From positions 124,001 to 188,000 of the IMG/VR virus record IMGVR_UViG_3300043446_003193: a stretch of 64,000 nt of DNA. The stretch is one strand, 5' to 3'. The notes beneath the pieces are model-generated. The model saw only the letters and a list, made by a program, of their open reading frames with translations, had not been told where the DNA came from and searched no databases. Position numbers and translations under genes: made by a program. Shown one piece after another: positions 18,035-37,225 of this stretch (its first letter is position 1; each line of letters begins with the position of its first letter).

Positions 18035-18043
18035 TATAAATAT
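18035..18043 (-). promoter_or_regulatory. Putative late promoter motif ATATTTATA
   Basis: Intergenic, upstream of 18009. Confidence 0.65.
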
Positions 18044-18049
18044 TATTAA

Positions 18050-19144
18050 TTATAGTTTCGTTATTGTTATATATCCTGAACCTGAATTATATCTACTTAA
18101 ATTTGTTATTGCACTTCCACTAAATGTAGATAATCCATCATAATTTCCATCAGATGTTGATATCGTAGTTGCAGTTGATATGATATAAGAACTACCACCC
18201 CCACCACCATCAGATGCAGGTTGAGAACTTCCCCAAGAACCGGCACCTCCGGCATATCCACCACCACCACCACCGGCAATAGGAGTTCCACCGCCACCAC
18301 CACCAAATCCACCTGCAGTTGCATTTGCGGGTGTATATGTTAATGCAGGTAATCCACCAACTGCACCACTTACAAATGCAAAACCTCCTGCACCATGTGA
18401 ACCCAGTTGTGTCATTGTAAATGTTCCGTCACCTCTCATACCATTTCCTAAAAATCCACCACCACCACCTCCATCGTAAAGATTTGAAGATACTACCGAT
18501 GCAGTATTTATATGAGAACGACCTCCTAAACTTCCTGTTCCACCGGGAGCGTTATGTCTTGATAATGAACCGGTTGTTGCGGTTGAACCATTACCTGCCA
18601 ACGAACCACTTTTTAGTATTCCACCAAATCCCATAACATCACCACTATATGCACCTTGCCCACCTGCACCACCTGCTACTAAATAAGGAGTATTTGAACC
18701 TGATAAAACAAAGAATGAACCTCCGCCTCCGCCTACACCAACATATGATAATCCAGATGTTGCTGTATTTAAACTTCTTTGACCAACAACCATTGTAAAC
18801 TTTTGTCCTTGTGTTAGAGGAACTCTGGCTTTAACAATTGCTCCCATAGAACCAGAATATATTCTTGGATATGAACTAATACCACTTGCTGCACCCGCTA
18901 CTTCAATTTCATAAGTTGCAGTTTCAGGTACTGTCCATATTTGATAACCTTGAAATGAACCAGTTGTAAAAAATAAAGGATTTAAAAAATAACTACCAGA
19001 TGTAGAACCCGTATATGCTGCTAATATCGCAGTACCCAAAGGACCGGTTGAACCACTAATTCCTACTGTTGTAAAAGTAAACGATGTAAATGGATATAAT
19101 GCTAAAGAACCTATTGTAAATCCATTTGAAAATTGTATTGCCAT
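18050..19144 (-). CDS. Glycine-rich domain protein (ALK/LTK-type Gly_rich), probable fibre tip
   Basis: GYQIWTVP...YEIEVAGA...VVGQ...GGGGGSF...LVAGGAGG...GGFGGGGG...GGGGGGY.GG pattern. Confidence 0.7.
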   Translation of the reverse strand: MAIQFSNGFTIGSLALYPFTSFTFTTVGISGSTGPLGTAILAAYTGSTSGSYFLNPLFFTTGSFQGYQIWTVPETATYEIEVAGAASGISSYPRIYSGSMGAIVKARVPLTQGQKFTMVVGQRSLNTATSGLSYVGVGGGGGSFFVLSGSNTPYLVAGGAGGQGAYSGDVMGFGGILKSGSLAGNGSTATTGSLSRHNAPGGTGSLGGRSHINTASVVSSNLYDGGGGGGFLGNGMRGDGTFTMTQLGSHGAGGFAFVSGAVGGLPALTYTPANATAGGFGGGGGGTPIAGGGGGGYAGGAGSWGSSQPASDGGGGGSSYIISTATTISTSDGNYDGLSTFSGSAITNLSRYNSGSGYITITKL

Positions 19145-19156
19145 AATTTATACTAT

Positions 19157-21649
19157 TTAGAATAATCTCGCAACACCTTTAATATTAAATGTTCCCGTTT
19201 CAGTTACTTTAATTTGTATATTTCCACCAGATTGTCCAATTGACATTGCAGGTGATGGTCCACCTGCGCCCGATGTTTGTTTACCATTTTGTGATATACC
19301 TGCGTTTACTCCATAAGATGCAAATTGATAGTTTGCAGAAGTTGCAGTTGAGTTTGTAGTATTTACCATCAAAATATCAAATGTTCCACCATTGTAAGAT
19401 GCAGTTGGATAACTCACCAATACATATGCTGTTGGGTTTGTTACTGCTGTATAACTAAATGCGGTTGATGTAGAACCCAATGAAGATTGTAATGTTGCAA
19501 TACTTGCTGATATATTTTGGTCAGATGTGGTAGTACTCGCCGATAATGCATAAAGTGAAGCACTTACCGTATTAAATGATGAACCAGTCCAACTATTAAA
19601 TGATGCGGTTGAAAGTAATGATGAAGTTTGAAATTGTGATGATACACCATTACTATTTCCTACCCAAGCATACCCACTTTGTAAACTTGCGGTAAATGAA
19701 CCACTTATATTAACTGCTCCTGTAATTTCAGCTATTCCATTGTTTTGAATATATAAACTACTACCACTTGTTAATGATAAAACAGAACCAGATGGTATTG
19801 ATAAAGATGAACTTATTAGTGCTACGGAACTTACAGTTAAAGAACCTGTAATAATTTGATTACCATTAAATGCGTTTGAACCGGTAGTTGCAAATGAAGA
19901 TGTTAATTGAGAACTTCCACTAATTACACCAGTAGGTAATAATGAAATAATTTGTGAACTACCACTAACAATACCTCTACCCGTTGTTTCATAACTTCCA
20001 CTTACAAACCCAAAAGAAGATATTTGTGCAGAACTACTAATTGTTCCGGCAGGCGTTCCTGCTACGGTTAAGTTTACTATTCTCGTATTAAATGAAGAAC
20101 TATCTGTTGTATATGATGATGTAAATGTATTAAATGATGAAGTTGTTGTATATCCCCAATTAGTTGTTTGCAACGATGAAGATATAATTCCTCTACCAAT
20201 TATTTCATAACTTCCACTTACAAAGCCAAATGAAGATATTTGTGTAGAACTACTAATTGTTCCAACAGGTATTGTTGAAGAACTAATAAATCCTAATGAG
20301 GTTATTTGTGCAGAAGAACTAATTGTTCCTGCAGGAGAGCTTCCACTTAAATCATATCTTGCATCAAGTGAAGATGTAAGTTGCGAAGAACCACTAATTG
20401 TTCCAGATGGTAATTGTGCTGAACTACTTATTATTCCTCTACCAATTATTTCATAACTTCCACTAACAAATCCAAATGATGTAATTTGTGTAGAAGAACT
20501 TATTAAATTAGATGGTAATGGTTGAACACTACCACTTAATGTATATCTTAAATCATATGAAGATGTTAATTGTGAAGAACTACTAATTGCTCCACTTAAA
20601 CTTGTCAAATATGAACCACTAACAAATCCCAAAGATGTAATTTGTGTAGATGAAGATATAATATTTCTACCAATTGTTTCATATGAACCCGTATTTGATT
20701 CTAATGAGTTTAATCTATCTACTAAACTTGCTGTTGAAAAACTTGCTGTAAAATTATTAAGTGATGATAAATCTACAAATGATTGTGTGGATACTTGAAC
20801 TCCGTTTATTGTTAATCCACCTACTATTTGAACACTACCACTTAAAATTTGAGTATCATTTAATTGGTCTCCAAATTGATTACTACCACTTGCATAAATT
20901 ACAGAAGATGTTTCATATAAAGTATGTAAATTAGTTACAGTTAAATTATCAATAGTTGTTCCATTTAATTGAGTACTACTACTGATTATTCCTCTACCTG
21001 TTGCTTCAAACTCAGTAATTTGTGCAGATGAACTATAAACTCCACTTCCACCCAATACTTGCGAACTTGCACTTACCACTCCCGTTGGTAATAAACTTAT
21101 GATAGAACCACTTAAAATACCTCTACCAGTAGTTTCGTAAGAACCACTCACAAAACCAAATGATGTTATTTGTGATGAACCACTAATTAATGCAGGTTTA
21201 TTTACAATTGTATCAAAATTAGTTGAACCGGTTATACCTGCCGCGGCGGATATTGGTGCTAATATATCAATTGTTGTACCACTAATACCATCAATTCTTC
21301 TTAAATATGCTCTATCATTTGCAGTTAATTGATTTGCAACAAATGATGTACCTGTTTGAGTATCTGTAAATGTGTTTGATCCAGTTATTGCAAATCCTAA
21401 ATCATTTATTTGTTGAGATGATGATATTGTCCCATTTGGTATATTTGTAGATGCTGTAAATGATGCGGTATAATTTTCTAATGAAGTTAATCTTTGATCA
21501 TCTAATGTATTTATACTATCTTTTACTGCATTACTAACAACACTTAATCCCAATTTATAGGTCGTACCTCTATCAATACCCACTATTTGAGTTTCAAGTG
21601 ATGCACTTGTGAGTGGTATTAGTTGCGATATTCTTTTTCCTTGACTCAT
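19157..21649 (-). CDS. Ser-rich repetitive fibre/decoration protein
   Basis: 830 aa; KRISQL N-terminal module and many GTISSSxQI / GFVSGSYE..GRGII repeats. Confidence 0.7.
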   Translation of the reverse strand: MSQGKRISQLIPLTSASLETQIVGIDRGTTYKLGLSVVSNAVKDSINTLDDQRLTSLENYTASFTASTNIPNGTISSSQQINDLGFAITGSNTFTDTQTGTSFVANQLTANDRAYLRRIDGISGTTIDILAPISAAAGITGSTNFDTIVNKPALISGSSQITSFGFVSGSYETTGRGILSGSIISLLPTGVVSASSQVLGGSGVYSSSAQITEFEATGRGIISSSTQLNGTTIDNLTVTNLHTLYETSSVIYASGSNQFGDQLNDTQILSGSVQIVGGLTINGVQVSTQSFVDLSSLNNFTASFSTASLVDRLNSLESNTGSYETIGRNIISSSTQITSLGFVSGSYLTSLSGAISSSSQLTSSYDLRYTLSGSVQPLPSNLISSSTQITSFGFVSGSYEIIGRGIISSSAQLPSGTISGSSQLTSSLDARYDLSGSSPAGTISSSAQITSLGFISSSTIPVGTISSSTQISSFGFVSGSYEIIGRGIISSSLQTTNWGYTTTSSFNTFTSSYTTDSSSFNTRIVNLTVAGTPAGTISSSAQISSFGFVSGSYETTGRGIVSGSSQIISLLPTGVISGSSQLTSSFATTGSNAFNGNQIITGSLTVSSVALISSSLSIPSGSVLSLTSGSSLYIQNNGIAEITGAVNISGSFTASLQSGYAWVGNSNGVSSQFQTSSLLSTASFNSWTGSSFNTVSASLYALSASTTTSDQNISASIATLQSSLGSTSTAFSYTAVTNPTAYVLVSYPTASYNGGTFDILMVNTTNSTATSANYQFASYGVNAGISQNGKQTSGAGGPSPAMSIGQSGGNIQIKVTETGTFNIKGVARLF
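19900..21200 (-). repeat. Coding Ser-rich repeats in the 830-aa gene
   Basis: Multiple SSSxQI(T/S)S(F/L)GFVSGSYE..GRGI units. Confidence 0.8.
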
Positions 21650-25398: not shown

Positions 25399-25432
25399 TA
25401 AAAAAAGAGGAGATATTTCTACCCCCTCTTTC
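25399..25432 (-). terminator. Intrinsic terminator after the major capsid gene
   Basis: Minus strand AAGAGGGGGTA-GAAA-TATCTCCTCTTTTTT. Confidence 0.85.
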
Positions 25433-25457: not shown

Positions 25458-27083
25458 TTATAAAGTGTTTAAACCGTTTACGATAATCTTACCGTAGAAT
25501 TCTGGTCTAACGATCTTCTTAGCGTAACGAGTCATAACTCCTCTTCTTGGAGTGAAGTTAGTTGGATCGTACACTAAAGGAGTCATAATCAATGGAACAT
25601 ATGGAGCGTATACAGCACCTGTCTCAAAGAAGTTAGAACCTTTAAATCCTAATAAGATAACGTTCTCAGTCATGTATGGGTTTTTGTAAACATCATATCT
25701 GTTAGAGATAGAACCGATGTTAGTTACACCTGCAGCAAATTGTAAAGCATCTTTACCAGGATTTGCAGAGAAACCGTTCATTGATTCCAAAATAGTTGCA
25801 ACGTTTGGAGATACTACTACGAAGTTAGCACCACCTCTCATTGTTAACTGATGGATTTTGTTAGATACCTTTTGTAATTTGATACCTAAAGTTTGATACC
25901 AAGTACTCTTAGTGTATGCAGAAGCAGCTGCTGCGTTAGAATCTACCGCGAATGCTCCAGTTGCACTATTGTAATCGTATCCAACTCTTGCATCCCAATA
26001 ATCAGTTGTGAATGCGTTTTGTTGTAACATTTCTAAGATTTCCAAATCAATTTCTAAAGAAATGTACTCAGATAACATTTGAGTTAACTCAGCTTCAGCG
26101 TCTACACTATGGTAAGCATTTAAGTCTTGAGCTAATTCAGGAGTCCAAATTGCTTTCAACTTACGAGTCTTAGCAACGATTGGTTCTGATTTCAATTCTA
26201 ATTCAATTTCTGGAATGTCTAAGTTTGAACCTTTATCTTCAAAGTCACCTCTGTTTTCAGCAGATGGTTGCTTATGATAAGATAATGTAGCACCACCAGC
26301 ACTTACACCACCTGCAGATCCTGTACCGTAGAATTCTACTGAAGTACCATTGATCTTAGTGTATTTAGGATAGTAGTTGTTAGCTGTGATAGAACCAGAT
26401 TGTAAGATTTCAAATGCTCTTACACCGTTCCAATCAGCATCAGTTGGTAAAGTTACAGTTACTTTTTTGATACCACCAGCTGCTAAAGAAGCAGATAAGT
26501 CAGCGTCAAAATTGATATCAGCCCAAGATGCAGTTGCAACTGTTGCGTCTAACGCTGCTGATGTATCGTTGATTGTATAACCAAATCTTCCAGCTCCGTA
26601 AAGACCACCTTCAGCAACTTGAGTAGAACCCAATTTGTTACCGTGAGATGCTTCAGAGTTGTAAGTTAAGTTATCCTTACCGAAAGTACCACCTTTACCG
26701 AATAATGAATTACCGTTAAAGTCTGGGTTACCAGCTTGTGAAGTACCATATTTGAAGTCCATGTAGAAAATAAGACCTGAAGGTAAGTTCATAGGTTGTA
26801 CTGAAACGAATTCTTTAGCTGCGATAGAACCGAAGATTCTTCTTACTAAAGGTAACGCAACACCAGCCCATTCTTCAGAACCTGCTGAAGTACCTGTTCT
26901 TGTAGCCTCATCCAATAATTGCTTAGCTTGGTTTTCTAACATTACTGCCATACCATGCTTAGTAGTTTCTGAACCTACTCCTTCAAGTAAGCCAGTTTTT
27001 TCCCATTTGCTTTTCAAACCTCTAGTTTGCTCAAGCATTACGCTCTGTGGGTTAGCGCCTGTCATTAATTTTTTTAAGTCCAT
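25458..27083 (-). CDS. Major capsid protein (T4 gp23 family)
   Basis: LPLVRR, VSVQPMNLPSGLIFY, AKTRKLKA.WT.ELAQDL.A.H..DAEAEL, YAPYVPL, F.PRRGVMTRY are gp23 signatures. Confidence 0.97.
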   Translation of the reverse strand: MDLKKLMTGANPQSVMLEQTRGLKSKWEKTGLLEGVGSETTKHGMAVMLENQAKQLLDEATRTGTSAGSEEWAGVALPLVRRIFGSIAAKEFVSVQPMNLPSGLIFYMDFKYGTSQAGNPDFNGNSLFGKGGTFGKDNLTYNSEASHGNKLGSTQVAEGGLYGAGRFGYTINDTSAALDATVATASWADINFDADLSASLAAGGIKKVTVTLPTDADWNGVRAFEILQSGSITANNYYPKYTKINGTSVEFYGTGSAGGVSAGGATLSYHKQPSAENRGDFEDKGSNLDIPEIELELKSEPIVAKTRKLKAIWTPELAQDLNAYHSVDAEAELTQMLSEYISLEIDLEILEMLQQNAFTTDYWDARVGYDYNSATGAFAVDSNAAAASAYTKSTWYQTLGIKLQKVSNKIHQLTMRGGANFVVVSPNVATILESMNGFSANPGKDALQFAAGVTNIGSISNRYDVYKNPYMTENVILLGFKGSNFFETGAVYAPYVPLIMTPLVYDPTNFTPRRGVMTRYAKKIVRPEFYGKIIVNGLNTL

Positions 27084-27106
27084 TGTATGTACTTTTAATT
27101 GTTTGT

Positions 27107-28324
27107 TTATTTAATAATACCTGCTAATTTCTTAAATCTGTCAGAAAAATCAGCTGATTCAGCAATTACTTGCTTAGCTGCTGCTGGCTTAGTAGATTTT
27201 ACTGCTTTGCTAGCGATTCCTTCAGAAATAGATTTTTTAGTAGATTTGTTAGATGAAGAATATTTGAAATTCTCTGCTAATGTAGAGTAAACCAATTTAA
27301 CTTCTCTAACTGATTTTGTTCTATCCAAAGTTTCAATCACTTTAACTTTTTGTTCGTTAGTCATGTTGTGTGCTCTGAATAATTTGTTAGCGAATAACAA
27401 CTTAGCGTTCAATAAGTTCACTTCGTTGATTGTTTTTTGTAAAGACTTGATAGTTTTGTAAGCTTCGTTAAGTTCTTTTTCTTTTTCTTCTTCTTCAGCT
27501 TCGTCAACTTTCTCTTTATCGTCTTTCATATCCGCTTCCATTTCACGTAAGATTTCTTCTAAATCAACAACGTCTTTGTCATCTTCTTTAGATTCTTCTT
27601 CGTTGGTTACAACCACTTTAGGGTCTTCACCTTTGTCTGTACCTGCTTCAGAACCATCTGCTAAATTTTCGTTTTTAGCTTCTTCATCTTCTTCAGCTTC
27701 GTACATAGGTTTTTCTTCTTCTTCAGAATCTTCACCTTCTAATTGAGCTTCTAATTCTCTGATGATAGCTTCTAAGTCCATGTCATCTTCTGTTTCTTCT
27801 TCTTCAGAACCAGTTACGTCATAGTCTTCACCATCTTCTTCTCCTGTCTCATCCGCACCCGCAGTAAATGCTGGTAATTCTTCTTCAGAATCTTCTCCTT
27901 CTAATTCTGCTAATCTAGCTTTTAATTGAGCGATTTCGTCTTGTTTTGCAACTTCGTCATCACCAGCTTGATCATCAGCGAAAGGATTTTCTTCTTCAGA
28001 GATATCTGCTACCTTTTTGAAATCATCAACTTGTGCACCTGGTTCGCCAGATGTTGTTTCAGTTGAACCTGCTTCAAATTCAGTATCAGCGTCTAATGTA
28101 GGATTAGATGTAGATGCACCAATGTTTGATGAATCTAATTCTTCGTCAACTTTTTCAGCTTCTTTATCTTCAGCTTCAGCTTCTGCTCTTAACTTTGCAG
28201 ATAAGATAGATTGAAGTCTTGGAGTGAAAGCCTCTTCAAGTGCGATTTTTGCGTTTGCTAAAGCAGTTTCTTTTACAGCTTTGGCATCAGCGATTGCTTC
28301 TTTCAATAATTTTGAATTTGCCAT
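27107..28324 (-). CDS. Prohead core scaffold protein (gp22-like)
   Basis: Very acidic coiled-coil protein directly upstream of the capsid gene; ends FKKLAGIIK. Confidence 0.75.
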   Translation of the reverse strand: MANSKLLKEAIADAKAVKETALANAKIALEEAFTPRLQSILSAKLRAEAEAEDKEAEKVDEELDSSNIGASTSNPTLDADTEFEAGSTETTSGEPGAQVDDFKKVADISEEENPFADDQAGDDEVAKQDEIAQLKARLAELEGEDSEEELPAFTAGADETGEEDGEDYDVTGSEEEETEDDMDLEAIIRELEAQLEGEDSEEEEKPMYEAEEDEEAKNENLADGSEAGTDKGEDPKVVVTNEEESKEDDKDVVDLEEILREMEADMKDDKEKVDEAEEEEKEKELNEAYKTIKSLQKTINEVNLLNAKLLFANKLFRAHNMTNEQKVKVIETLDRTKSVREVKLVYSTLAENFKYSSSNKSTKKSISEGIASKAVKSTKPAAAKQVIAESADFSDRFKKLAGIIK

Positions 28325-28470
28325 CTTTTTTCCTTAAATTTTGTTGTGAAGTTATTCTTGTAGGGAACTCCAATGTAATTATGTTGATTGTTCGGTCACA
28401 CCTTATAAGAGAAGGGTATTCATTAACCAACGATGTCTTGTAATCTTATAATAAAAATAAGATATTTGAG

Positions 28471-28479
28471 AATAAATAT
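28471..28479 (-). promoter_or_regulatory. Putative late promoter motif variant ATATTTATT
   Basis: Upstream of the scaffold-capsid unit. Confidence 0.55.
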
Positions 28480-28489
28480 ATAAAATTTT

Positions 28490-28510
28490 TAGAAAACTAA
28501 AGAAAATTAG
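28490..28510 (+). repeat. AGAAAACTAA-AGAAAATTAG tandem (candidate operator)
   Basis: TAGAAAACTAAAGAAAA (17 nt) is identical to 55574-55590. Confidence 0.7.
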
Positions 28511-28686
28511 TGATTATACTTATTTTTTCTTATAGTTTCTTCTTTTTGTAACCTTTTTTTAATAGAAGGTTTAGTAAAGTTCTTTCTTTCTCTAAGTTCT
28601 TCTATTTGTTTTATGGACTGAACTTTCTTTTTATATTCCTTTAATGCCCACTCTATGTTTCCGTTTTTCACGTTAACTATTAACAT
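28507..28686 (-). CDS. rpsU: 30S ribosomal protein bS21 (phage-encoded; 59 aa, absent from ORF track)
   Basis: My translation: MLIVNVKNGNIEWALKEYKKKVQSIKQIEELRERKNFTKPSIKKRLQKEETIRKNKYNH*. It has the S21 pattern V...NIE.ALK..K.K......ELR.R..F.KPS..R, with an MLI(I/V) start as in Bacteroidota S21. Confidence 0.9.
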   Translation of the reverse strand: MLIVNVKNGNIEWALKEYKKKVQSIKQIEELRERKNFTKPSIKKRLQKEETIRKNKYNH

Positions 28687-28692
28687 AACTAA

Positions 28693-28992
28693 TTAATATG
28701 GTGTTTGATATTCCAATTGTTTTTTTAATTCTCTTTCGTATTCCTTTTCAATTTTATCTAAATCATCTTTAGCAGATTTAATATCTTCTTGATGTTTTTT
28801 TAATTGATAAAGATATTGGTTTTTTCTATCTTCGTTTTGTTCATCAAAATATGCTTTACTCATCATTTTTTGACGAGTTGTTAATCCTTCATATTTTCTT
28901 ATAGCATCAATGTATGCAGATGATGCTTTTCTAAAACCGGCTCTTATTTTAACTGCTTCTTCTTTTAAAGGAATTAGATTTATTAGTTTCAT
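28693..28992 (-). CDS. Putative internal head protein
   Basis: Coiled-coil 99 aa beginning MKLINLIPLKEE. Confidence 0.5.
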   Translation of the reverse strand: MKLINLIPLKEEAVKIRAGFRKASSAYIDAIRKYEGLTTRQKMMSKAYFDEQNEDRKNQYLYQLKKHQEDIKSAKDDLDKIEKEYERELKKQLEYQTPY

Positions 28993-29363
28993 TATTGTAA
29001 ATTAACTAATTTATATTTTGTAGAATATAATAAAGTTACAATCGTATCAATATCGTTTTGTAACCAACTCATTTGTAACTTTTCATCTTTTCTTAATTTC
29101 TCAACTGCTTTACAAAGTTTTTCAAAATAAGAAATTATATTTTTGATATCATTGTTAGTATCAATACCACTTACTGGTTGAACTTTGATTAATCCGTACT
29201 GTCCTTGATATGCTTCCACTAATCCATCTACTAATCCACCAATTGAATCGTAATATGTACCTAAAGCCAAATGAGCAGATAATGCACCAACACCTTTAAC
29301 TCCCCAATGGAAAGCATGTGCTTGTGTTCTACTGTGTAATAATAATGATGCTAATTGTTCCAT
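28992..29363 (-). CDS. Ferritin/Dps-like four-helix protein (DUF5856-like)
   Basis: QAH.FHW...HLALG.YYD.I..LVD.LVE.YQG.YG...LQN.ID.I..L...T.YKL pattern. Confidence 0.75.
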   Translation of the reverse strand: MEQLASLLLHSRTQAHAFHWGVKGVGALSAHLALGTYYDSIGGLVDGLVEAYQGQYGLIKVQPVSGIDTNNDIKNIISYFEKLCKAVEKLRKDEKLQMSWLQNDIDTIVTLLYSTKYKLVNLQ

Positions 29364-29792
29364 TTATTTACAAGTTTTACATTCGTTAATTCCCAGTCTT
29401 TGTTTCATCACATCTTCAGAAATATCTGCTATTTCAAAATATCTTCCTAATACATGTCCCATATCTTCATAAAGAGCCTCTAATCTTTGTTGTTGTGCTC
29501 TAGCTTCTACTGCTTCCTTTTCAAATGAAGTTTGTAACTTTTTAAGTTCATTCATATTTCTCTTAATAGTTACTCTATCAAACCAATCTCCACCTTCTCT
29601 TAAAGTATATTCTTGTGCTGCATCTGCAATACCACCCAATGTTTCTGCAATTTGCATAATATCAGATTTTCTACTCATACCTTCTCTATGTTGGTTATAT
29701 GTAGAAATTATTTCTAAGAAGTGTTTTTTTAATTCAGAAGGCAATTGTTCTAATTGTTCTTCTTCTTTCAATAAATCTTTTAACTTTATCAT
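29364..29792 (-). CDS. Putative internal head protein
   Basis: 142 aa helical, begins MIKLKDLLKEEE. Confidence 0.5.
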   Translation of the reverse strand: MIKLKDLLKEEEQLEQLPSELKKHFLEIISTYNQHREGMSRKSDIMQIAETLGGIADAAQEYTLREGGDWFDRVTIKRNMNELKKLQTSFEKEAVEARAQQQRLEALYEDMGHVLGRYFEIADISEDVMKQRLGINECKTCK

Positions 29793-30067
29793 CTATGTAC
29801 GATTTTATACTTTTTTAATCTTTGTACTGCCTGAGATAAGTCCTGTGGAGTCATATCTAATGCGTCTACTAATTTAGCAATAACTAATTGTTCTTTTTTT
29901 CTTGGTAAGTTATATGATTTAATAACTTGCAATGCTCTATCTAAAAATCTTTCTACTTTAGAAGGTAGATTAACATCCATATCTTCCAAATCTTCATTCA
30001 TTTCTTCTTTTGAAAGAACTACTGCAGTTGTATAATTAGCCGGTATTAAGTTTATTAACTTTGCCAT
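29789..30067 (-). CDS. Putative internal head protein
   Basis: 92 aa, begins MAKLINLIP; ATGA overlap with the next gene. Confidence 0.5.
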   Translation of the reverse strand: MAKLINLIPANYTTAVVLSKEEMNEDLEDMDVNLPSKVERFLDRALQVIKSYNLPRKKEQLVIAKLVDALDMTPQDLSQAVQRLKKYKIVHR

Positions 30068-30068
30068 A

Positions 30069-30659
30069 TTAGTTTAATTCAATTATGATTTCTCTCATTA
30101 AATCCTGTGATTTACACCACTTACCACATTCTTCTGCCATCTGTTTCCATTGTTTAGATTCGTTCATTGGTGCCATAAATGCTCCATGTGTAGATGGATT
30201 AGAAACAAAATCCCAACCTACTAATTCAAAATCTTCTTGAACCATTACAGTTCCATCTCTTAATTCTTTAACAGACCCTAAACCTCTTGATGAAATACCT
30301 AAACGAATATTATTCTTTAATAATTCTTTTAATATGTTACCAGATGGAGTTGAAAGTATTTCTACTACACCACATACATCATCACCTTCCCAAAAAATTT
30401 CTCTAATATTGTGAGATACATTTTTTAAGTTAATTACTGGAGAATCCGGATGGTCTAATTCACCCAACGCTCTTCTTTCTTTAATGAGTTGTTCGTATTT
30501 TTTACACTCTCTTTCCAATATTTCACGTGGATATCTTCTACCATTTTGGTTTGCAGCCCCAGCTCTTTGAAGAATGCCCTTAACTAAATAAGTACCATTT
30601 TCTTCTTGTTGAAGTTTTGCTTCAAATAAGTGTGTTTCTATTAATAGTCCTTTGTTCAT
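30069..30659 (-). CDS. Prohead core protease (T4 gp21 family)
   Basis: NQNGRRYP, ALGELDHP, INL.NVSH, TPSGNI, LGISSRGLGS, DFVSNPST..AF signatures. Confidence 0.95.
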   Translation of the reverse strand: MNKGLLIETHLFEAKLQQEENGTYLVKGILQRAGAANQNGRRYPREILERECKKYEQLIKERRALGELDHPDSPVINLKNVSHNIREIFWEGDDVCGVVEILSTPSGNILKELLKNNIRLGISSRGLGSVKELRDGTVMVQEDFELVGWDFVSNPSTHGAFMAPMNESKQWKQMAEECGKWCKSQDLMREIIIELN

Positions 30660-30952
30660 TAGTCTTTTTTTCTTAATGCTGCTAAATCAGAACCTTCAAT
30701 TTCTCCGTCTTTATCAACATCAATTTGTTTTTGCTTATCAGTCAATTCTGCTTCATTATATCCTCTTAATCTACCTTCTGATTTTGCTTTATAAGCAGTA
30801 TCAACCGCATTAAAGAATTTTTTCTTATCATCATCACTCATAGAGCTGATATCTTTGCCACTCTTATCTAACATATGTTTAAACAATTGCTGATAATCGT
30901 TTTCTTCTTTAACTACCTGACGGATAAGTTCTTTTAATTGTGATGTTTTCAT
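30659..30952 (-). CDS. Putative internal head protein with EF-hand-like loop
   Basis: MKTSQLKELIRQVVKEE start; C-terminal DVDKDGEIEGSD. Confidence 0.55.
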   Translation of the reverse strand: MKTSQLKELIRQVVKEENDYQQLFKHMLDKSGKDISSMSDDDKKKFFNAVDTAYKAKSEGRLRGYNEAELTDKQKQIDVDKDGEIEGSDLAALRKKD

Positions 30953-31549
30953 TTATTCTGATATTTTACGAATTTGTTGCTCTAATTTTATCAATCTTTC
31001 CTTTATAGTATAAATATGTTTATTTGTTCTTTTCCAAAAATTCTGATTACTTACACCACTTTCTTGCTTTATTTTACCATACCAATTCAAAAACCTTTCC
31101 ATTTCAGCAAGTTGTTTACTTATATTAGAAATTCCTTTTCCTATTTTGTGTGTTGCAGGAACATTTTCTTTTTTAAGTTCTAACCAACGATTTTCTTTAA
31201 CAACACTATATCCAGTTAAATCTGCTTGCCTTTTTCCTTTAGATTTTTCATCACCTTTTTTAGTGAACGCATATGGAGTATTATAAGGACCAGCCGCATC
31301 GCTAGTTGTCATTTCATCAACCATTCGTTCTCTAACCATTTTACGAATGATTTCTTTTATTTTTTGAAGTTCTTCTTCCTTTTTATCAGGTAATCCAGCG
31401 TGTTTTGTAGATGCAAAATCTTTAGCATCTTTATCGGACATTGAATCTGCTGCTTTTTGTACTTCTGGAGATGGGTTTTCCATATCACCTTTTTGAGCGG
31501 CATGAACCATTCCCATAAATCTTTGTTGTGCTTTAGATACTGCTGGCAT
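30953..31549 (-). CDS. DUF3008-like multi-module head protein
   Basis: MPAVSKAQQRFMG...DFASTKH.GLP.K N-terminal module followed by further modules after Glu sites. Confidence 0.6.
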   Translation of the reverse strand: MPAVSKAQQRFMGMVHAAQKGDMENPSPEVQKAADSMSDKDAKDFASTKHAGLPDKKEEELQKIKEIIRKMVRERMVDEMTTSDAAGPYNTPYAFTKKGDEKSKGKRQADLTGYSVVKENRWLELKKENVPATHKIGKGISNISKQLAEMERFLNWYGKIKQESGVSNQNFWKRTNKHIYTIKERLIKLEQQIRKISE

Positions 31550-31805: not shown

Positions 31806-32681
31806 TTATTTTTTTATTGATTCCTTTAATTCTTTTAATAATTCATAACTCATCATCAATGCAGATAAATGTTGTTCTTTAATCTTTTTTACAGATTTAA
31901 TTTTTTTAATATTTGCAATTGTTTCTGCTAATTTGATTTTAGTAACTTTATCTGAAATTTTTGAACCAACTTCTTTTAAATTAGTAACTATGTTTGAAAC
32001 TTCATTACTAACATATTCATTTAACTTACCAGTATTATTGATATTGTTGATATATTCTCTCAATAATCCTTTTTGTTCTTCAGTAAGGTTTTTGTATTTT
32101 GTATTAAAACTTTCTACTAATAACTTGTAAGATACTGCTCTTAAATCCTCATCTTGTTTTTTATATTCTTCTAAAACAGCATCTTTCATTTTAGAATCTT
32201 TATTTTGAATAGAAGAGTTGATAATATTTTCTGCAATTGTAAAACGAGATGAAACTATATCAGTTGGGTCAAATTGTTCATCTGATGTAACTGTTTCAAA
32301 AATTTTATAAATAGATGCTAATGTTTTATAATTAGAAATTGGAGATTTAATAAACTCATCTAAATTATAAGTTTCTTTAATCTCTTTAATAAGATTATAT
32401 TTTTCTTTTGTAAGTTTTTTCTCGTCTAATCTTTTACGAGCTTCTAAAATCGTATTGATGAATTGATCAGCTTTTGATTCTGAATTATATTTTTCATTAA
32501 TAAGATATTGGTATAATTTCAATTCTTTTGATAATTCTTTTTTAGAATTAAAATATTCTTTTAGAATTTTTTCTGCTACGGACTTATTTGCAGACATTAT
32601 TTCTGCGGTAATTTGTCTTACTAGTAATTCAAATATAAAACCAGTATTTTTAAATTTAGAATGTTTAATTTTTTTCATCAA
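31806..32681 (-). CDS. Conserved head-morphogenesis protein downstream of portal
   Basis: 291 aa helical, KHSKFKNTG.IFELLVR; ATG at 32678 is the likelier start. Confidence 0.55.
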   Translation of the reverse strand: MMKKIKHSKFKNTGFIFELLVRQITAEIMSANKSVAEKILKEYFNSKKELSKELKLYQYLINEKYNSESKADQFINTILEARKRLDEKKLTKEKYNLIKEIKETYNLDEFIKSPISNYKTLASIYKIFETVTSDEQFDPTDIVSSRFTIAENIINSSIQNKDSKMKDAVLEEYKKQDEDLRAVSYKLLVESFNTKYKNLTEEQKGLLREYINNINNTGKLNEYVSNEVSNIVTNLKEVGSKISDKVTKIKLAETIANIKKIKSVKKIKEQHLSALMMSYELLKELKESIKK

Positions 32682-32699: not shown

Positions 32700-32708
32700 T
32701 ATAAATAT
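32700..32708 (-). promoter_or_regulatory. Putative late promoter motif ATATTTATA
   Basis: Intergenic, upstream of 32681. Confidence 0.65.
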
Positions 32709-32725
32709 ATTTTTCTATTAGTTTA

Positions 32726-34474
32726 TTACTCTTTTGTTAAATCTTCTGTCAAAATCTTCTTTTTGTTACCATTCATATCTTTGAAAACTTCTAAATATGA
32801 ATTTTTTGGAACATATTTTTTAACAGAACCTTCTTTCGCTTTAAGAGTTTTTATTCCTAATGGGTCTCTACCTTCTGGATGGTCATCCTTACCATATCTA
32901 ACTGGGTCTTTAGGTCTACCAACCCCATCTTCCTCTAATTCTGCTTTTAATTTATTTAATTCTTCTTCAACATTTGTAGGGCCTTCGGTTCCAGTTTCTT
33001 TTGCTGGATCTACACCCTGTGTTTCAATTGATGTTAAACGGAATGTTTGTTTAGTATCTTCTAATATTGAAAGTGTTTGCTCATCTTGTTCATCTTTAGC
33101 CATTCCCATTATAGCTTGATACATCCATTCTTTAGAGAACATTTTTGTTTGTTGCATTTGTTGAATTAATGCAACTTTAGATGTATACAACTCTACTTTC
33201 TCTTGCTCATAAATTTTAGATGGAATAGTTAATTCCAATGTAAAGTTTGTTAAACGGTCATCATCAATACCTTGTGCGTATAAGTGGATGATTGCAATTT
33301 TGGTTAATTCAGAAACCATAACTCTTTGTATTCTCTCAATGGTTTTTGCAAATCTAACATCCATCGCTGCAAGAGTTGCTTTACCATTTGTATCTTCTTC
33401 ATATCCTAAATATGCTTTTGGAATTTGAAGTGCTGCCATCAATTTATTTTTAAGATAATTGATGTCTTCAATCATATTGTATTCCAACCCTTTTAGAGTA
33501 TCAATTGAAGTACCATTATCATTACCTCTTACTGGCATATAATAATCTTCAATCAAATTCTGTATATTGTATTTTAAATTATATTCACCCGTTCTTTCAT
33601 CAACAAATGGAACTTTTTTAGATGCATTTATAATTTTTTGCATGTAGTTATCTACCTCATTTGGTGGAATATTACCTACATCAATTTTAAAGATTCGTTT
33701 TTCAGGTGCTCTCATTACTCTATGAATCAACATAGCATCTTCCATCAACATCAATTGTTTCCAAACTCTTCTTGCACCTTCTAACATTGATTTACCATAT
33801 GGAAGGAAGTTGGAATCGTTATTTAAACGGAAGTGAGCAACTTCATAATTTTCAAATTCTTTTTTAGGAGTTTGTCCATAAGAACCCAATGGGTTTTGAT
33901 ATGGAGCGTATACAAATTTAACTCTTTGTGGATTTTGTTGGTCAAACCCTTCAACTCTACTAACTTCATATGAAGAAAGTGGCATAACATTTACAATACC
34001 AATTCCTTCTTCTGCTGCGATTTCTAATTGTAAATATAAATCACCATATTTTACTAAATTTCTTGTCCATGGCCATAAGTTAAATTCAACATTTAAAATA
34101 TCGTAGAAAAGATTTTCTAATATTTGTTTTACATTATCATCTTCGTGATGAATTTTTAAAACATTACCCATTTCATTTCTAGCAGTACACTCATCTGCAT
34201 ATGTATTTAATGCTGATGATAGTATTGGGTCTGTATCCATTGAATCGTAATCTCTGAACAAGTCAATTCTAACTTGTTGATATGCCATTGATGATTCAAT
34301 GTTACCAGTTCCATAATTTGTAACCTTTAATTTCATAAAGCGGTCAACAAGATTAGTGGTCATATTTTGCCACTCATCTGTATCAATTACTTTAACTCCC
34401 TTTTCGGTTTTACGAACTATGGTGTTTGTTGAAAATAATTTTTGTAACCTGCCTAATACTGATTTATCTGCCAT
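32726..34474 (-). CDS. Portal protein (T4 gp20 family)
   Basis: LMLMEDAMLIHR.MRAPE.RIF.IDVGN.P, EDYY.P.RG...T.IDTL.G, EDI.Y...KL..AL.IP. Confidence 0.95.
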   Translation of the reverse strand: MADKSVLGRLQKLFSTNTIVRKTEKGVKVIDTDEWQNMTTNLVDRFMKLKVTNYGTGNIESSMAYQQVRIDLFRDYDSMDTDPILSSALNTYADECTARNEMGNVLKIHHEDDNVKQILENLFYDILNVEFNLWPWTRNLVKYGDLYLQLEIAAEEGIGIVNVMPLSSYEVSRVEGFDQQNPQRVKFVYAPYQNPLGSYGQTPKKEFENYEVAHFRLNNDSNFLPYGKSMLEGARRVWKQLMLMEDAMLIHRVMRAPEKRIFKIDVGNIPPNEVDNYMQKIINASKKVPFVDERTGEYNLKYNIQNLIEDYYMPVRGNDNGTSIDTLKGLEYNMIEDINYLKNKLMAALQIPKAYLGYEEDTNGKATLAAMDVRFAKTIERIQRVMVSELTKIAIIHLYAQGIDDDRLTNFTLELTIPSKIYEQEKVELYTSKVALIQQMQQTKMFSKEWMYQAIMGMAKDEQDEQTLSILEDTKQTFRLTSIETQGVDPAKETGTEGPTNVEEELNKLKAELEEDGVGRPKDPVRYGKDDHPEGRDPLGIKTLKAKEGSVKKYVPKNSYLEVFKDMNGNKKKILTEDLTKE

Positions 34475-35617: not shown

Positions 35618-37225
35618 TTATCCAATTAACCAGGTTAAATTTTCTGTTCCTTTTTTTCCTAAATCCATTTCATATGGATTTTGTTTTAAATGGTTAGTGG
35701 ATATTAATCCTTCATATTTGTTTATTTGTGTTGCACCTAACATACTTTTAGTTAAGTCAATACCTTCTTGTTTTAAACGAAGTGCTGTATTTCTAACCCA
35801 AAGTCCAATTGCCATAGCCATTGTCAAGTCATCATTATAACCCTTCATAGCTTCTGCTCTTCCAGCTTGCCAAATAAATGTAAATAATTCATCTATCAAT
35901 CTACCAGAACGAATAAGGATATCTTTATCGTTTATGTAGGTATCTAATGTTGAAATAATAAGAGGACGAGTTTTTGATGTAGTAGAGAATCCTGCAACCA
36001 TTTTCTTTTCATCTCTATAAAATTTACTACTCATTTGTTTTTCTACATCAATATATTTTAAATCAACACTCATATAAAATAGATTTCCGTATCCTCTATC
36101 TATACATTGTTGAATTGTAGACCATCCTACGTTTGAGTTTTCTACTACTAGTAATGCGTTGTTCCATTCGGTTGCAACGGCTACTAAAAAGTTTCCAAAG
36201 TCTTTTGTTTCAATTTTACCTCTATATTCTGCAACTTGAGAACTATCCTCAATATCAATAACCTGAAAAGTAGAATAATCCGAACCATCTCCTCTCGCTA
36301 CGTCGGCCACTACCATATATTGTCTATTATAATTTGGATGTTCCCATTTCCAATAGTTACCATCAAACCCAGTTTTTTCTATCGGGTCCATCACATATGT
36401 ATCTTTATACCACATCAATAATTGAGGATCTATTACAGTGTCACCAGAAGATACGAAGTCACAGTCACATTCTTGTGCTGCACCTTTAACTCCTAAGATT
36501 CTTGTTTGTTCATCTCTCCACGCTTGATTTCTTTCAGGGTGTACAGTCCAATGTAGATTAATACAATTAAACCCGTTTGAACCATTTTCTCCTTCAACCC
36601 ACATTTTATGGAACCAGTTACCCACACCATTAGGAGTAGATAATACAATAGCAGCACCACCCGTTGAAAGTGTTGACTGTGCTGATAACCAAATTTCATC
36701 AATATCTCTAATGAATGCGGCCTCATCCACAACTAATAGGGATAGGGCTTCCGAACGTCCTGCATCAGGAGAACTTGCAATTGCTTTTACTTGAGAACCA
36801 TTTTTTAATTTAAGAGAAAGTTTGTTATCTTCAGCTGCTGCGGTTGAACCATCTCTTAACCAAACAGGAAGAAGGTCATGCATTACTCTAACCTTTTCAA
36901 CAAGGTTTTTGGCTACCGTAACTTTTGTTGCAATAACCAATGCATTAAAATCTTGATTAAATAACATTTTCCAAAGAATGTATCCTGCAGAAAGTGTTGA
37001 AAGACCTAACTGACGGGATTTAAGAATAATGTTAAAACGATTATCTTTAAAATCTGTTAAACATCCCTCCTGGAAAGGATAAAGGTGAAAGGGTATTTTT
37101 CCTCTCACCGGGTGCTGAATTACACAATATTTTTTCATAAAGTAAATGGGGTCTCCCGCACACTTACGATATTCTTCAGCGATTATCTCTTTCAGGCTCT
37201 TCTTTGGTTGAGCTTGAGCTTGCAT
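35618..37225 (-). CDS. Terminase large subunit (T4 gp17 family)
   Basis: Walker A ILKSRQLGLST, Walker B LLVVDEAAF, STPNG, RNase H-like ADVARGDGSDYS and NDDL.MA. Confidence 0.96.
   Translation of the reverse strand: MQAQAQPKKSLKEIIAEEYRKCAGDPIYFMKKYCVIQHPVRGKIPFHLYPFQEGCLTDFKDNRFNIILKSRQLGLSTLSAGYILWKMLFNQDFNALVIATKVTVAKNLVEKVRVMHDLLPVWLRDGSTAAAEDNKLSLKLKNGSQVKAIASSPDAGRSEALSLLVVDEAAFIRDIDEIWLSAQSTLSTGGAAIVLSTPNGVGNWFHKMWVEGENGSNGFNCINLHWTVHPERNQAWRDEQTRILGVKGAAQECDCDFVSSGDTVIDPQLLMWYKDTYVMDPIEKTGFDGNYWKWEHPNYNRQYMVVADVARGDGSDYSTFQVIDIEDSSQVAEYRGKIETKDFGNFLVAVATEWNNALLVVENSNVGWSTIQQCIDRGYGNLFYMSVDLKYIDVEKQMSSKFYRDEKKMVAGFSTTSKTRPLIISTLDTYINDKDILIRSGRLIDELFTFIWQAGRAEAMKGYNDDLTMAMAIGLWVRNTALRLKQEGIDLTKSMLGATQINKYEGLISTNHLKQNPYEMDLGKKGTENLTWLIG

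What the first reader, a model, noticed from the sequence alone, without database searches (positions are those of the whole stretch)
28507..28686. Unannotated ribosomal protein bS21 inside the head operon
Seen: a 59-aa ORF below the track cutoff, between the internal-protein genes and the scaffold. Established: large freshwater phages predicted to infect Bacteroidota are known to encode bS21 next to head genes and express it late, so this places the phage in that group. Inference: its divergent C-terminus (EETIRKNKYNH) could change anti-SD sequestration and favour phage late mRNAs. A few genes here have SD-like sites (AGGAG before 8191, GGAG before 1878).
Basis: partly seen in the sequence, partly recalled or inferred. 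Interest (0 to 1): 0.6.

Follow-up and report, generated by a model that had tools for sequence, protein, structure and literature searches.

The report
Phage-encoded ribosomal protein bS21 gene
A 59-codon gene in the head-gene block of a 209-kb T4-like phage does encode ribosomal protein bS21, a known trick of aquatic phages; this copy lacks the tyrosine that its Bacteroidota-type relatives use to hide the ribosome's anti-Shine-Dalgarno tail.

Summary
Window 28507-28686 (minus strand) is a 59-aa ORF that passes the curated cut-offs of Pfam Ribosomal_S21 (48.8 vs 27 bits) and TIGR00030 (41 vs 28.95 bits). It is under strong purifying selection (dN/dS about 0.1). In all 80 related IMG/VR loci it holds the same place: last gene of the portal/protease block, on the same strand as the head genes, about 190 nt upstream of the scaffold-like gene and the gp23 capsid gene.

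Its nearest cellular relatives are all Bacteroidota bS21 (50-65% identity). The phage's start sites avoid Shine-Dalgarno (SD) motifs and carry the Bacteroidota adenine peak at -14 to -11. A Bacteroidota host is therefore likely.

The phage does not fit the published 293-331 kb bS21 phage clades. It is 209 kb, the gene is co-oriented with the head genes, and Tyr54 is absent.

Three differences from host-type rpsU stand out. There is no SD leader (0/75 phage vs 68/80 bacterial). Arg replaces the anti-SD-stacking Tyr54 (75/75 vs 0/80). The C-terminal part is shorter and more basic.

Most likely it is a late-made bS21 that enters host 30S subunits free of host feedback and alters initiation. Whether it frees the anti-SD is untested. 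Phage bS21 is a known kind; this is a variant of it. No expression data could be obtained.

The parts
28507..28686 (-). bS21 (rpsU-like) gene, 59 aa
   Evidence: ORF. Pfam PF01165 48.8 bits vs cut-off 27. TIGR00030 41 bits vs 28.95. dN/dS 0.096. AF2 model has three helices, pLDDT 78.
28687..28692 (-). 6-nt spacer before the bS21 start; no Shine-Dalgarno box
   Evidence: Sequence. 0 of 75 phage copies have GGAG, GAGG or AGGA upstream, against 68 of 80 Bacteroidota rpsU genes with GGAGG.
28693..28992 (-). 99-aa accessory ORF, present only in a minority of relatives
   Evidence: tblastn synteny table: found in roughly a dozen of 80 loci. Elsewhere the DUF5856 gene abuts bS21. No family above threshold.
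28992..29363 (-). DUF5856 gene, the near-constant upstream neighbour of bS21
   Evidence: PF19174 53.7 bits and phrog_858. Adjacent to bS21 in nearly all 80 loci.
29364..30067 (-). two small ORFs (142 and 92 aa) of unknown function after the protease gene
   Evidence: ORFs. Conserved in relatives. No family above threshold.
30069..30659 (-). gp21-type prohead core serine protease
   Evidence: PF03420 103.7 bits and phrog_207 182 bits.
32700..32709 (-). nearest upstream copy of the phage's recurrent promoter-like motif TATATTTATA; candidate start of the transcription unit that ends with bS21
   Evidence: The motif core (ATATTTAT) occurs in 28 of 60 intergenic segments, 10.9x enriched. This copy lies 28 nt upstream of gene 31806-32681. 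No RNA data.
28471..28480 (-). promoter-like motif TATATTTATT, just downstream of the bS21 stop and 156 nt upstream of the scaffold-like gene
   Evidence: Its position is conserved in the 50-sequence alignment.
28325..28470 (-). long, very conserved leader of the scaffold/capsid unit. Three hairpins at about 28443-28463, 28383-28431 and 28347-28372, and a conserved TAAGGA box at 28331-28336
   Evidence: Mean pairwise identity of the core is 94.5%, against 86% for the bS21 coding sequence and 70% for the scaffold-like gene. 98.5% of cells are paired. Five pairs have compensatory changes against 2.2 in shuffles, reached in 1 of 500 shuffles. No Rfam match.
27107..28324 (-). acidic 405-aa scaffold-like gene
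   Evidence: Position directly before gp23 and D/E-rich composition. No HMM hit. Syntenic in all loci long enough to show it.
25458..27083 (-). gp23-type major capsid protein
   Evidence: PF07068 262.3 bits and phrog_138. Nearest records are Microcystis phage Mel-JY01 at 55% and Flavobacterium phage immuto at 53%.

Best explanation
Shown: this is a real, selected, phage-borne copy of small-subunit ribosomal protein bS21. It derives from the Bacteroidota bS21 radiation. It is fixed as the last gene of the portal/protease block of a 209-kb T4-like phage.

Inferred mechanism: it is transcribed with the head genes from the phage's own TATATTTATA-type promoters and made when capsid proteins are needed. 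It then binds the platform of host (Bacteroidota) 30S subunits in place of, or in addition to, host bS21.

The phage copy has no SD leader, so its synthesis escapes the host feedback loop. In that loop, bS21-free ribosomes with an exposed anti-SD boost translation of rpsU.

The clade has Arg where every Bacteroidota bS21 examined has Tyr54, the residue that stacks on A1534. Its C-terminal part is also shorter and more basic, like that of SD-using bacteria. Ribosomes carrying it are therefore expected to hold the 16S 3' tail differently from host ribosomes, giving a phage-specific initiation preference.

The direction of that change is not settled by sequence. The anti-SD may be kept hidden and the supply merely topped up, or it may be partly freed.
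For: Identity.

Selection and spread.

Fixed co-oriented position in 80 of 80 loci, and in sister clades at 54-75% identity.

Bacteroidota affinity:
- The best 80 bacterial loci are all Bacteroidota.
- In the unbiased library search the commonest residue at the Tyr54 offset among the top 150 is Tyr (72), which is the Bacteroidota signature.
- The phage clade is one long branch next to Saprospiraceae and Flavobacteriales (SH-aLRT 99).

Host-like start sites:
- A reaches 63-73% at -13..-11 and 61% at -3. AGGAG occurs upstream of 1.9% of genes, the same as the in-gene control.
- Mean anti-SD pairing energy is -1.0 kcal/mol upstream of genes against -2.6 inside genes.
- This matches F. johnsoniae.

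No SD leader: 0 of 75 phage copies against 68 of 80 bacterial genes. Arg against Tyr at position 54: 75 of 75 against 0 of 80.

Part after KPS: pI 11.2, net charge +5.8 and 17 aa in phage; pI 10.3, +3.2 and 22 aa in Bacteroidota.

Published experiments:
- Tyr54 stacks on A1534 and helps turn the 3' tail toward bS18 and bS6 (PMC7797042).
- Y54A raises SD-led rpsU'-gfp about 3-fold and deletion of the C-terminal region 4-5-fold. Ribosomes without bS21 or its C-terminal region initiate less well on SD-less mRNAs (PMC9976891).
- A pelagiphage bS21 enters E. coli ribosomes, as cited.

Promoter-like motif and operon layout.
Against:
- Arg can also stack on bases, so Y54R need not behave like Y54A.
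- Three other phage-borne Bacteroidota-type bS21 keep Tyr54, as do the published clades. Losing Tyr is therefore not needed for the general phage strategy.
- Phage genes avoid SD, so a freed anti-SD has no obvious broad client.
- The closest cultured relative that has an S21 at this position infects Microcystis, although its S21 is of a different, non-Bacteroidota type.
- The bacterial scan was seeded by two peptide patterns and is biased toward relatives that share them.
Confidence: 0.55

Rival explanations
1. Anti-SD-freeing switch. The Arg54, short and basic C-terminus gives ribosomes whose 16S 3' tail is no longer sequestered. Late in infection a few phage mRNAs with SD-like boxes are then translated better (the scaffold-like gene with conserved TAAGGA, and a baseplate-module gene with GGGAGG).
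For: Tyr54 is replaced in 75 of 75 copies, and the C-terminal part resembles SD-using lineages. Y54A and C-terminal deletion free the anti-SD in F. johnsoniae. TAAGGA at -14..-9 of the scaffold-like gene is kept in at least 90% of 50 leaders, and an AAGGA box persists in a sister clade at 54% S21 identity. A baseplate-module gene carries a -12 kcal/mol box in 43 of 80 relatives.
Against: Genome-wide, SD pairing upstream of genes is depleted, not enriched. The capsid gene has no SD (-0.6 kcal/mol). The strong box of the baseplate gene lies in the Lys-Gly-Arg codons of the overlapping upstream gene, and the S21-less phage immuto encodes the same peptide, so coding constraint explains much of it. 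A freed anti-SD would also boost host rpsU mRNA.
Confidence: 0.2
2. Simple top-up. The phage copy works like host bS21 and keeps the anti-SD hidden. It only keeps all 30S subunits replete once host gene expression collapses, so that SD-less phage late mRNAs initiate efficiently.
For: Ribosomes lacking bS21 or its C-terminal region initiate less well on SD-less mRNAs. Phage start sites are SD-less and A-rich. The gene has no SD leader, so it is not damped by replete ribosomes.
Against: A pure top-up should keep a host-like sequence. Instead the clade sits on a long branch (1.64 changes per column) with fixed changes: Trp13 where bacteria have Arg14, Glu/Asp17 where they have Arg18, loss of the residue aligned to bacterial position 10, Arg53 where they have Tyr54, and loss of the acidic tail. 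All of this is under purifying selection.
Confidence: 0.2
3. Packaged internal protein. The small basic protein, encoded among prohead-core genes, is loaded into the capsid and injected with the DNA to act on ribosomes from the start of infection.
For: It sits between the prohead protease, small ORFs and the scaffold-like gene. The idea was raised by Chen et al..
Against: No capsid-targeting or conserved protease-site signature was found. No virion proteome is available. Sequence conservation follows bS21 rRNA-binding motifs.
Confidence: 0.08
4. Non-ribosomal RNA-binding role, for example binding the very conserved structured leader just downstream to control scaffold and capsid synthesis.
For: The leader is the most conserved stretch of the module and has covarying hairpins. 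The title and abstract of one paper listed (PMC12054373) report evidence that bS21 is a component of the OLE ribonucleoprotein complex.
Against: Adjacency is the only link. The leader is explained more simply as a promoter plus a 5' UTR. No binding data.
Confidence: 0.05
5. Functionless passenger gene picked up from a host.
For: Small host-derived genes are common in large phages.
Against: dN/dS is 0.096. The position is fixed in 80 of 80 loci and in sister clades. The clade is monophyletic and far from any bacterial sequence.
Confidence: 0.02

Closest known systems
bS21-encoding freshwater phage clades a-e predicted to infect Bacteroidetes (Chen et al. 2022, PMC9723584)
   Same: bS21 of Bacteroidota type lies within a few genes of TerL, portal, prohead protease and MCP. 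GC is about 32%. The genome carries many tRNAs. The proposed role is substitution into host ribosomes late in infection.
   Different: Those genomes are 293-331 kb, bS21 is on the opposite strand to the structural genes, and Tyr54 or another aromatic residue is kept. Here the genome is 209 kb, the gene is on the same strand and packed into the operon, and Arg sits at that position. A TerL phylogeny against those genomes was not possible.
Flavobacterium johnsoniae bS21 and its Y54A and C-terminal-deletion mutants (PMC7797042, PMC9976891)
   Same: The 7JIL bS21 chain is among the two best solved-structure matches (33.3 bits). They share the MLI(I/V) N-terminus and the RKNFTKPS core.
   Different: The host gene has a strong SD for autoregulation, Tyr54, and a 22-aa, less basic tail. 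The phage gene has none of these.
Microcystis phage Mel-JY01 RpsU (PP395634) and uncultured phage LR756508
   Same: Their MCPs are about 55% identical to this one. In both, an S21 gene lies on the same strand upstream of the MCP, and in Mel-JY01 it sits between the annotated prohead protease and the MCP.
   Different: Their S21 proteins are 75-79 aa and only distantly similar (36% over 33 aa for Mel-JY01). Mel-JY01's best solved-structure matches are Firmicutes and Proteobacteria types, not Bacteroidota. The Mel-JY01 host is a cyanobacterium.
Flavobacterium phage vB_FspM_immuto (MW353176)
   Same: T4-like head module with MCP 53% identical; the host is a Flavobacterium.
   Different: No S21 anywhere in its 160-kb genome.
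Pelagibacter phage HTVC008M bS21 (Mizuno et al. 2019, as cited in PMC9976891)
   Same: A T4-like aquatic myophage that carries bS21. It is the only case with evidence of incorporation into ribosomes (E. coli).
   Different: No detectable match to this protein in the phage collection at E 1e-3. The host phylum is different.

Membership tests
Ribosomal protein bS21 (Pfam PF01165 / TIGR00030) | Score above the curated family cut-offs over nearly the whole profile | tested here: met
   48.8 bits vs 27 (profile 2-54 of 55) and 41 bits vs 28.95.
Ribosomal protein bS21 (Pfam PF01165 / TIGR00030) | Small basic helical protein with the conserved (F/Y)xKPS motif | tested here: met
   59 aa with FTKPS at residues 37-41. 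AF2 gives helices 11-25, 27-33 and 42-57 at pLDDT 78. Foldseek found nothing at E <= 0.001; its 18 weak rows are all ribosome structures, and the low-numbered ones aligned at 54-59 columns to chains of bS21 size.
Ribosomal protein bS21 (Pfam PF01165 / TIGR00030) | Binds the platform of the 30S subunit | not testable with these tools
   Needs ribosome purification or cryo-EM.
Bacteroidota-type, anti-SD-sequestering bS21 | Nearest cellular relatives are Bacteroidota; shared N-terminal and core signature | tested here: met
   The best 80 bacterial loci are all Bacteroidota at 50-65% identity. The 7JIL (F. johnsoniae) chain is among the two top solved-structure matches. Tyr is the commonest residue at the position-54 offset among the top 150 library hits.
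Bacteroidota-type, anti-SD-sequestering bS21 | Signature Tyr54 that stacks on A1534 | tested here: not met
   Arg in 75 of 75 phage loci and in 117 of the 120 listed clusters; Tyr in 80 of 80 bacterial loci. An aromatic residue occurs 4-5 positions later in 114 of 120 clusters.
Bacteroidota-type, anti-SD-sequestering bS21 | C-terminal domain less basic than in other phyla | tested here: not met
   Part after KPS: pI 11.2 and net +5.8 in phage against 10.3 and +3.2 in Bacteroidota. The end RKNK(Y/F) aligns with the RKRKF end of Staphylococcus bS21.
Bacteroidota-type, anti-SD-sequestering bS21 | Strong SD upstream of rpsU (autoregulation) | tested here: not met
   0 of 75 phage copies against 68 of 80 bacterial genes with GGAGG. 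Three other phage-borne copies also lack it.
Chen et al. 2022 bS21 phage clades a-e | bS21 within a few genes of TerL, portal, protease and MCP | tested here: met
   TerL 35618-37225, portal 32726-34474, protease 30069-30659, MCP 25458-27083.
Chen et al. 2022 bS21 phage clades a-e | bS21 encoded on the strand opposite the structural genes | tested here: not met
   Same strand in the window and in all 80 related loci.
Chen et al. 2022 bS21 phage clades a-e | Genome of 293-331 kb | tested here: not met
   209,443 bp with a CheckV completeness of 100%. Related contigs reach 240 kb.
Chen et al. 2022 bS21 phage clades a-e | TerL falls inside clades a-e | not tested
   Their genomes were not found in the collections searched. 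Their supplements held none of the IMG/VR identifiers I tried.
Chen et al. 2022 bS21 phage clades a-e | bS21 transcribed together with late structural genes | not testable with these tools
Only the operon layout and a promoter-like motif are available.
T4-like (gp20/gp21/gp23) head module | gp23 MCP, gp21 protease and T4-type portal in one block | tested here: met
   PF07068 262 bits, PF03420 104 bits and portal phrog_213 225 bits. Portal_T4 and Phage_T4_gp13 are on record for a close relative.

The most novel reading that the evidence does not exclude
A whole lineage of T4-like phages of Bacteroidota carries a bS21 that joins a Bacteroidota-type N-terminal half to an 'SD-competent' basic tail lacking Tyr54. 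When it replaces host bS21 late in infection, it would convert SD-blind host ribosomes into ribosomes with an exposed anti-SD. That would act as a translational timing switch for the few phage messages with SD-like boxes, such as the scaffold-like gene behind its conserved structured leader.
Probability: 0.18. Interest if true: 0.75.

Novelty: new variant of a known kind. Interest (0 to 1): 0.45.

Why it matters
Phage-encoded bS21 is the commonest ribosomal protein in viruses, yet its effect on the ribosome has never been shown for a Bacteroidota phage. In Bacteroidota, bS21 is the protein that decides whether the anti-SD is hidden, and mutating Tyr54 changes which mRNAs are chosen. This abundant, uncultured phage lineage offers a natural allele with that residue replaced and the tail shortened. 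Close phage and host relatives keep the tyrosine. The existing F. johnsoniae reporter, ribosome and cryo-EM systems could test directly whether a phage can re-programme start-site selection by swapping one small ribosomal protein. If the allele behaves like wild type, the finding is an ordinary further example of a known phage auxiliary gene.

Tried and rejected
I did not try to reach reads another way, so 'late expression' is inferred from layout only.
- Fold search: Foldseek against PDB gave no hit at E <= 0.001. For a 59-aa extended helical protein this says little.
- Rfam: no family at E <= 1 in 27000-31000. The simple scan found no intrinsic terminator there.
- Strong-SD client genes: three genes outside the window have boxes of -10.7 to -12 kcal/mol and no Pfam or PHROG annotation. 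The best one is a baseplate-module gene whose box lies in the Lys-Gly-Arg codons of the overlapping upstream gene. I therefore downgraded it as evidence for SD use.
- DUF5856-bS21 pairing as a conserved couple: the S21-flanking genes tested in Mel-JY01 and LR756508 are not DUF5856.
- Donor family: the careful tree did not finish, and the quick tree leaves Saprospiraceae against Flavobacteriales unresolved.
- Environment: sample identifiers carry no description, so 'freshwater' is unverified. The only hint is a GOLLD RNA in the genome.
- Chen et al. supplements held none of the IMG/VR identifiers I tried.
- Complex prediction was not used, because bS21 contacts are mainly with rRNA.
- The alternative alignment that puts Tyr57 or Phe58 on Tyr54 needs a 3-4-residue insertion. 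I rejected it because KR and Q after KPS, and the R/K-x-K-aromatic end, align without gaps to Saprospiraceae bS21, which has both Tyr54 and Phe58.

Full report
**1. The observation**

Window 28507-28686 on the minus strand is an ATG-to-TAA ORF of 59 codons. It scores 48.8 bits against Pfam Ribosomal_S21 (cut-off 27; profile positions 2-54 of 55). It scores 41 bits against the NCBIfam equivalog TIGR00030 (cut-off 28.95), and it hits the PHROG annotated as ribosomal protein S21.

The window is bases 124001-188000 of an IMG/VR virus record of 209,443 bp that CheckV rates 100% complete. This is the only S21 in that record.

The gene is real and selected:
- The word search returned 229 protein clusters. 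The best 120 are 80-93% identical and, apart from two longer gene calls, 58-59 aa long. They lie on contigs of up to 240 kb.
- The IMG/VR scan confirmed 127 loci.
- dN/dS over 56 distinct coding sequences is 0.096.
[quoted passage not shown] Foldseek gave no significant match; its 18 weak rows are all ribosome structures.

**2. Surroundings**

All long ORFs of the window lie on the minus strand. Along that strand the order is as follows:
- TerL (35618-37225)
- T4-type portal (32726-34474)
- three genes of unknown function
- gp21-type prohead protease (30069-30659)
- ORFs of 92, 142, 123 (DUF5856) and 99 aa
- bS21
- a 182-nt gap
- an acidic 405-aa scaffold-like gene
- the gp23 capsid gene
- a gp13-like neck gene

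bS21 starts 6 nt after the preceding stop codon.

In 80 of 80 IMG/VR loci the order and strand are the same. The 99-aa ORF is found in only roughly a dozen of them. A gap of about 190 nt always follows bS21. "Inside the head operon" is therefore right in layout.

A motif TATATTTATA recurs in the genome's intergenic regions; its core ATATTTAT is in 28 of 60 segments. It sits 27-36 nt before several structural genes. The nearest copy upstream of bS21 is at 32709. Another copy lies just after the bS21 stop, at 28480-28471. I infer that bS21 ends one late transcription unit and that the scaffold/capsid unit begins right behind it.

**3. Whose bS21 is it?**

- The best solved-structure matches are a 63-residue bS21 chain of entry 9i5v (34.5 bits; its organism is not given in the output) and the chain of 7JIL, the Flavobacterium johnsoniae ribosome (33.3 bits). 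Firmicutes chains follow at 26-29 bits.
- The scan of 185,579 species genomes returned only Bacteroidota among its best 80: Polaribacter, Myroides/Paenimyroides, Flavobacterium, Saprospiraceae and Chitinophagia, at 50-65% identity. That scan is seeded by two peptide patterns, so it is biased.
- The unbiased HMMER search of 1.84 billion representatives found 334 proteins at E <= 0.001. Among the top 150, Tyr, the Bacteroidota signature, is the commonest residue at the position-54 offset (72 of 150).
- In a quick maximum-likelihood tree the phage sequences form one clade (SH-aLRT 99) on a long branch. That branch joins an unresolved fork with Saprospiraceae and Flavobacteriales.

The phage's own start sites look Bacteroidota-like:
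- Over 207 crude gene calls, adenine reaches 63-73% at -13 to -11 and 61% at -3. SD words are no more frequent than inside genes.
- Predicted pairing to the anti-SD is weaker upstream of genes (mean -1.0 kcal/mol) than inside them (-2.6).
- Baez et al. describe the same adenine peak at -14 to -11 and A-3 in F. johnsoniae.

One 5-kb contig of this clade was binned into a Flavobacteriaceae MAG.

A Bacteroidota host is thus likely but not shown. The cultured relatives split:
- Flavobacterium phage immuto (MCP 53% identical) has no S21.
- Microcystis phage Mel-JY01 (MCP 55%) has an annotated RpsU between the protease and the MCP, but of a different, non-Bacteroidota type.
- The 484-kb phage LR756508 has a third type, about 2 kb upstream of its MCP.

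 The slot is old in this group of T4-like phages, and its occupant differs between them.

**4. How the phage copy differs from host-type rpsU**

(a) Leader. 68 of 80 Bacteroidota rpsU genes carry GGAGG upstream. None of 75 phage copies has even GGAG, GAGG or AGGA. Three other phage-borne Bacteroidota-type copies also lack it.

(b) Tyr54. All 80 bacterial proteins have Tyr at KPS+14. All 75 phage loci, and 117 of the 120 listed clusters, have Arg. The three other phage-borne copies (LR756504, LR756502, MT837542) keep the KA(I/V)YVQ motif, as do the published clades.

(c) Tail. The part after KPS is 17 aa, pI 11.2 and net +5.8 in phage. It is 22 aa, pI 10.3 and +3.2 in Bacteroidota. It ends RKNK plus Phe or Tyr in 114 of 120 clusters. 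This end aligns with the RKRKF end of Staphylococcus bS21 and with the R-x-K-Phe that follows Tyr54 in Saprospiraceae.

(d) N-terminal helix. The clade has fixed Trp13 where bacteria have Arg14, and Glu/Asp17 where they have Arg18. It lacks the residue aligned to bacterial position 10.

Sister clusters at 54-75% identity also have Arg at that position. Where enough DNA is held, they sit in the same head-module slot. The Arg-type tail is therefore a trait of this phage lineage.

**5. What is known**

- Tyr54 stacks on A1534 where the 16S 3' tail turns toward bS18 and bS6, and it is uniquely conserved in the phylum. The strong SD of rpsU was proposed as an autoregulatory element (PMC7797042).
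- In F. johnsoniae, Y54A raises SD-led rpsU'-gfp about 3-fold and deletion of the C-terminal region 4-5-fold. Ribosomes lacking bS21 or its C-terminal region initiate less well on SD-less mRNAs. The authors speculate on phage bS21 exchange (PMC9976891).
- Chen et al. showed late co-expression of bS21 with structural genes in their clades. They also found a prohead protease within ten genes of bS21 in 310 of 900 published bS21 phages.

I found no paper that tests a Bacteroidota phage bS21.

**6. Mechanism**

Shown: identity, selection, fixed co-oriented position, absence of the SD leader, Arg for Tyr54, a shorter and more basic tail, and SD-avoiding A-rich phage start sites.

Inferred: late synthesis, entry into host 30S, escape from host feedback, and altered handling of the 3' tail.

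I commit to [quoted passage not shown] at about 0.55. Within it, sequence cannot decide between a top-up that keeps the anti-SD hidden and a variant that frees it.
- For freeing: the tested role of Tyr54 and the tail typical of SD-using bacteria.
- Against freeing: Arg can stack on bases, the phage's genes avoid SD, and a freed anti-SD would also boost host rpsU.

The candidate SD clients are few. The scaffold-like gene has a conserved TAAGGA at -14..-9 (-5.1 kcal/mol), and an AAGGA box persists in a sister clade. A baseplate-module gene outside the window has a -12 kcal/mol box in 43 of 80 relatives. That box lies in the Lys-Gly-Arg codons of the overlapping upstream gene, which weakens it as evidence.

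**7.

- Right on the gene, its place and the likely host phylum.
- Wrong that this places the phage in the published group (strand, size, Tyr54).
- Half right on the C-terminus: conserved within the clade, yet different from host bS21 exactly at the anti-SD contact.
- The quoted SD-like sites exist but are at chance level.

**8. Novelty**

Phage bS21 next to head genes is a known kind, and relatives of this gene are already labelled S21 by JGI. What appears new is the variant: an abundant lineage whose copy has lost Tyr54 and the SD leader and has a general-type basic tail. I score interest at 0.45.

**9. By-products**

- The 145-nt stretch between the promoter-like motif and the scaffold-like gene's start is the most conserved DNA of the module. 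Its core is 94.5% identical on average, against 86% for the bS21 coding sequence.
- It has three hairpins, two of them with compensatory changes.
- It has no Rfam match.
- Elsewhere the genome carries 19 tRNA genes by ARAGORN (one of undetermined identity), a tmRNA and a full-length GOLLD RNA.

Noticed in passing
window 28325-28506 (minus strand): The non-coding gap after bS21 is the most conserved stretch of the head module. Its core is 94.5% identical on average across about 50 relatives. It holds a promoter-like TATATTTATT followed by a leader of about 145 nt with three hairpins. Two hairpins show compensatory changes (5 pairs against 2.2 in shuffles). A conserved TAAGGA box lies before the scaffold-like gene's ATG. 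There is no Rfam match. The leader is nearly intact in a sister clade at 75% S21 identity and partly kept at 54%.
   Followed up: partly
window 63481, 60564, 38574, 35613, 32709, 28480, 25394, 15624 (minus strand, first base of motif): A recurrent intergenic motif TATATTTATA lies mostly 27-36 nt upstream of structural genes. Its core is in 28 of 60 intergenic segments of the genome, 10.9x enriched. It is probably the phage's late promoter element. It resembles the Bacteroidota -7 box TAnnTTTG (my recollection, not checked here) with the last G replaced.
   Followed up: partly
window about 25400-25428 (minus strand): A G+C-rich hairpin followed by seven T lies right after the capsid gene and just before the next promoter-like motif. 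It looks like the terminator of the scaffold/capsid unit.
   Followed up: no
outside the window: G000:C1 about 13965-20832 (locus L261): A translation-related RNA island: 19 tRNA genes by ARAGORN (one of undetermined identity), a tmRNA (Rfam 79.6 bits) and a full-length GOLLD RNA (RF02032, 267 bits against gathering 150) embedded among the tRNAs. By its Rfam name GOLLD is 'lake- and Lactobacillales-derived', which gives an indirect hint of a lake origin.
   Followed up: partly
outside the window: G000:C1 195079-196146 (locus L167) and relatives L176-L255: A 355-aa baseplate-module gene is preceded by AAAGGGAGGGC (-12 kcal/mol with the anti-SD). The box is kept in 43 of 80 relatives and resembles the host rpsU leader. 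It lies in the Lys-Gly-Arg codons of the overlapping upstream gene. The S21-less phage immuto has AAA GGA AGA there, so only the synonymous G choices make it a perfect SD.
   Followed up: partly
window 28693-28992: The 99-aa ORF directly upstream of bS21 is an accessory insertion. It was found in only roughly a dozen of the 80 related loci; elsewhere DUF5856 abuts bS21.
   Followed up: partly
L163 4185-4412 (Mel-JY01) and L166 1489-1728 (LR756508): Related T4-like phages hold S21 genes of quite different types (75 and 79 aa) at a similar place upstream of their capsid genes. Flavobacterium phage immuto has none. This suggests replacement or fast divergence of the occupant of a stable slot.
   Followed up: partly
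L172 (GCA_009923175.1, contig RFUC01000128.1): A 5-kb contig of this phage clade (protease, DUF5856, bS21) is deposited inside a 'Flavobacteriaceae bacterium' MAG, and its bS21 is named as that bacterium's ribosomal protein. It is a likely binning artefact and a weak hint of host association.
   Followed up: no
window 38582-42667, 44610-49406, 49396-55491, 55768-58914: Very large genes: 1361 aa with an N-terminal cytidyltransferase-like part; 1598 aa with no family; 2031 aa with a tail-fibre C-terminus; and a 1048-aa ORF that matches SbcD-like then SbcC-like nuclease families, apparently fused.
   Followed up: no
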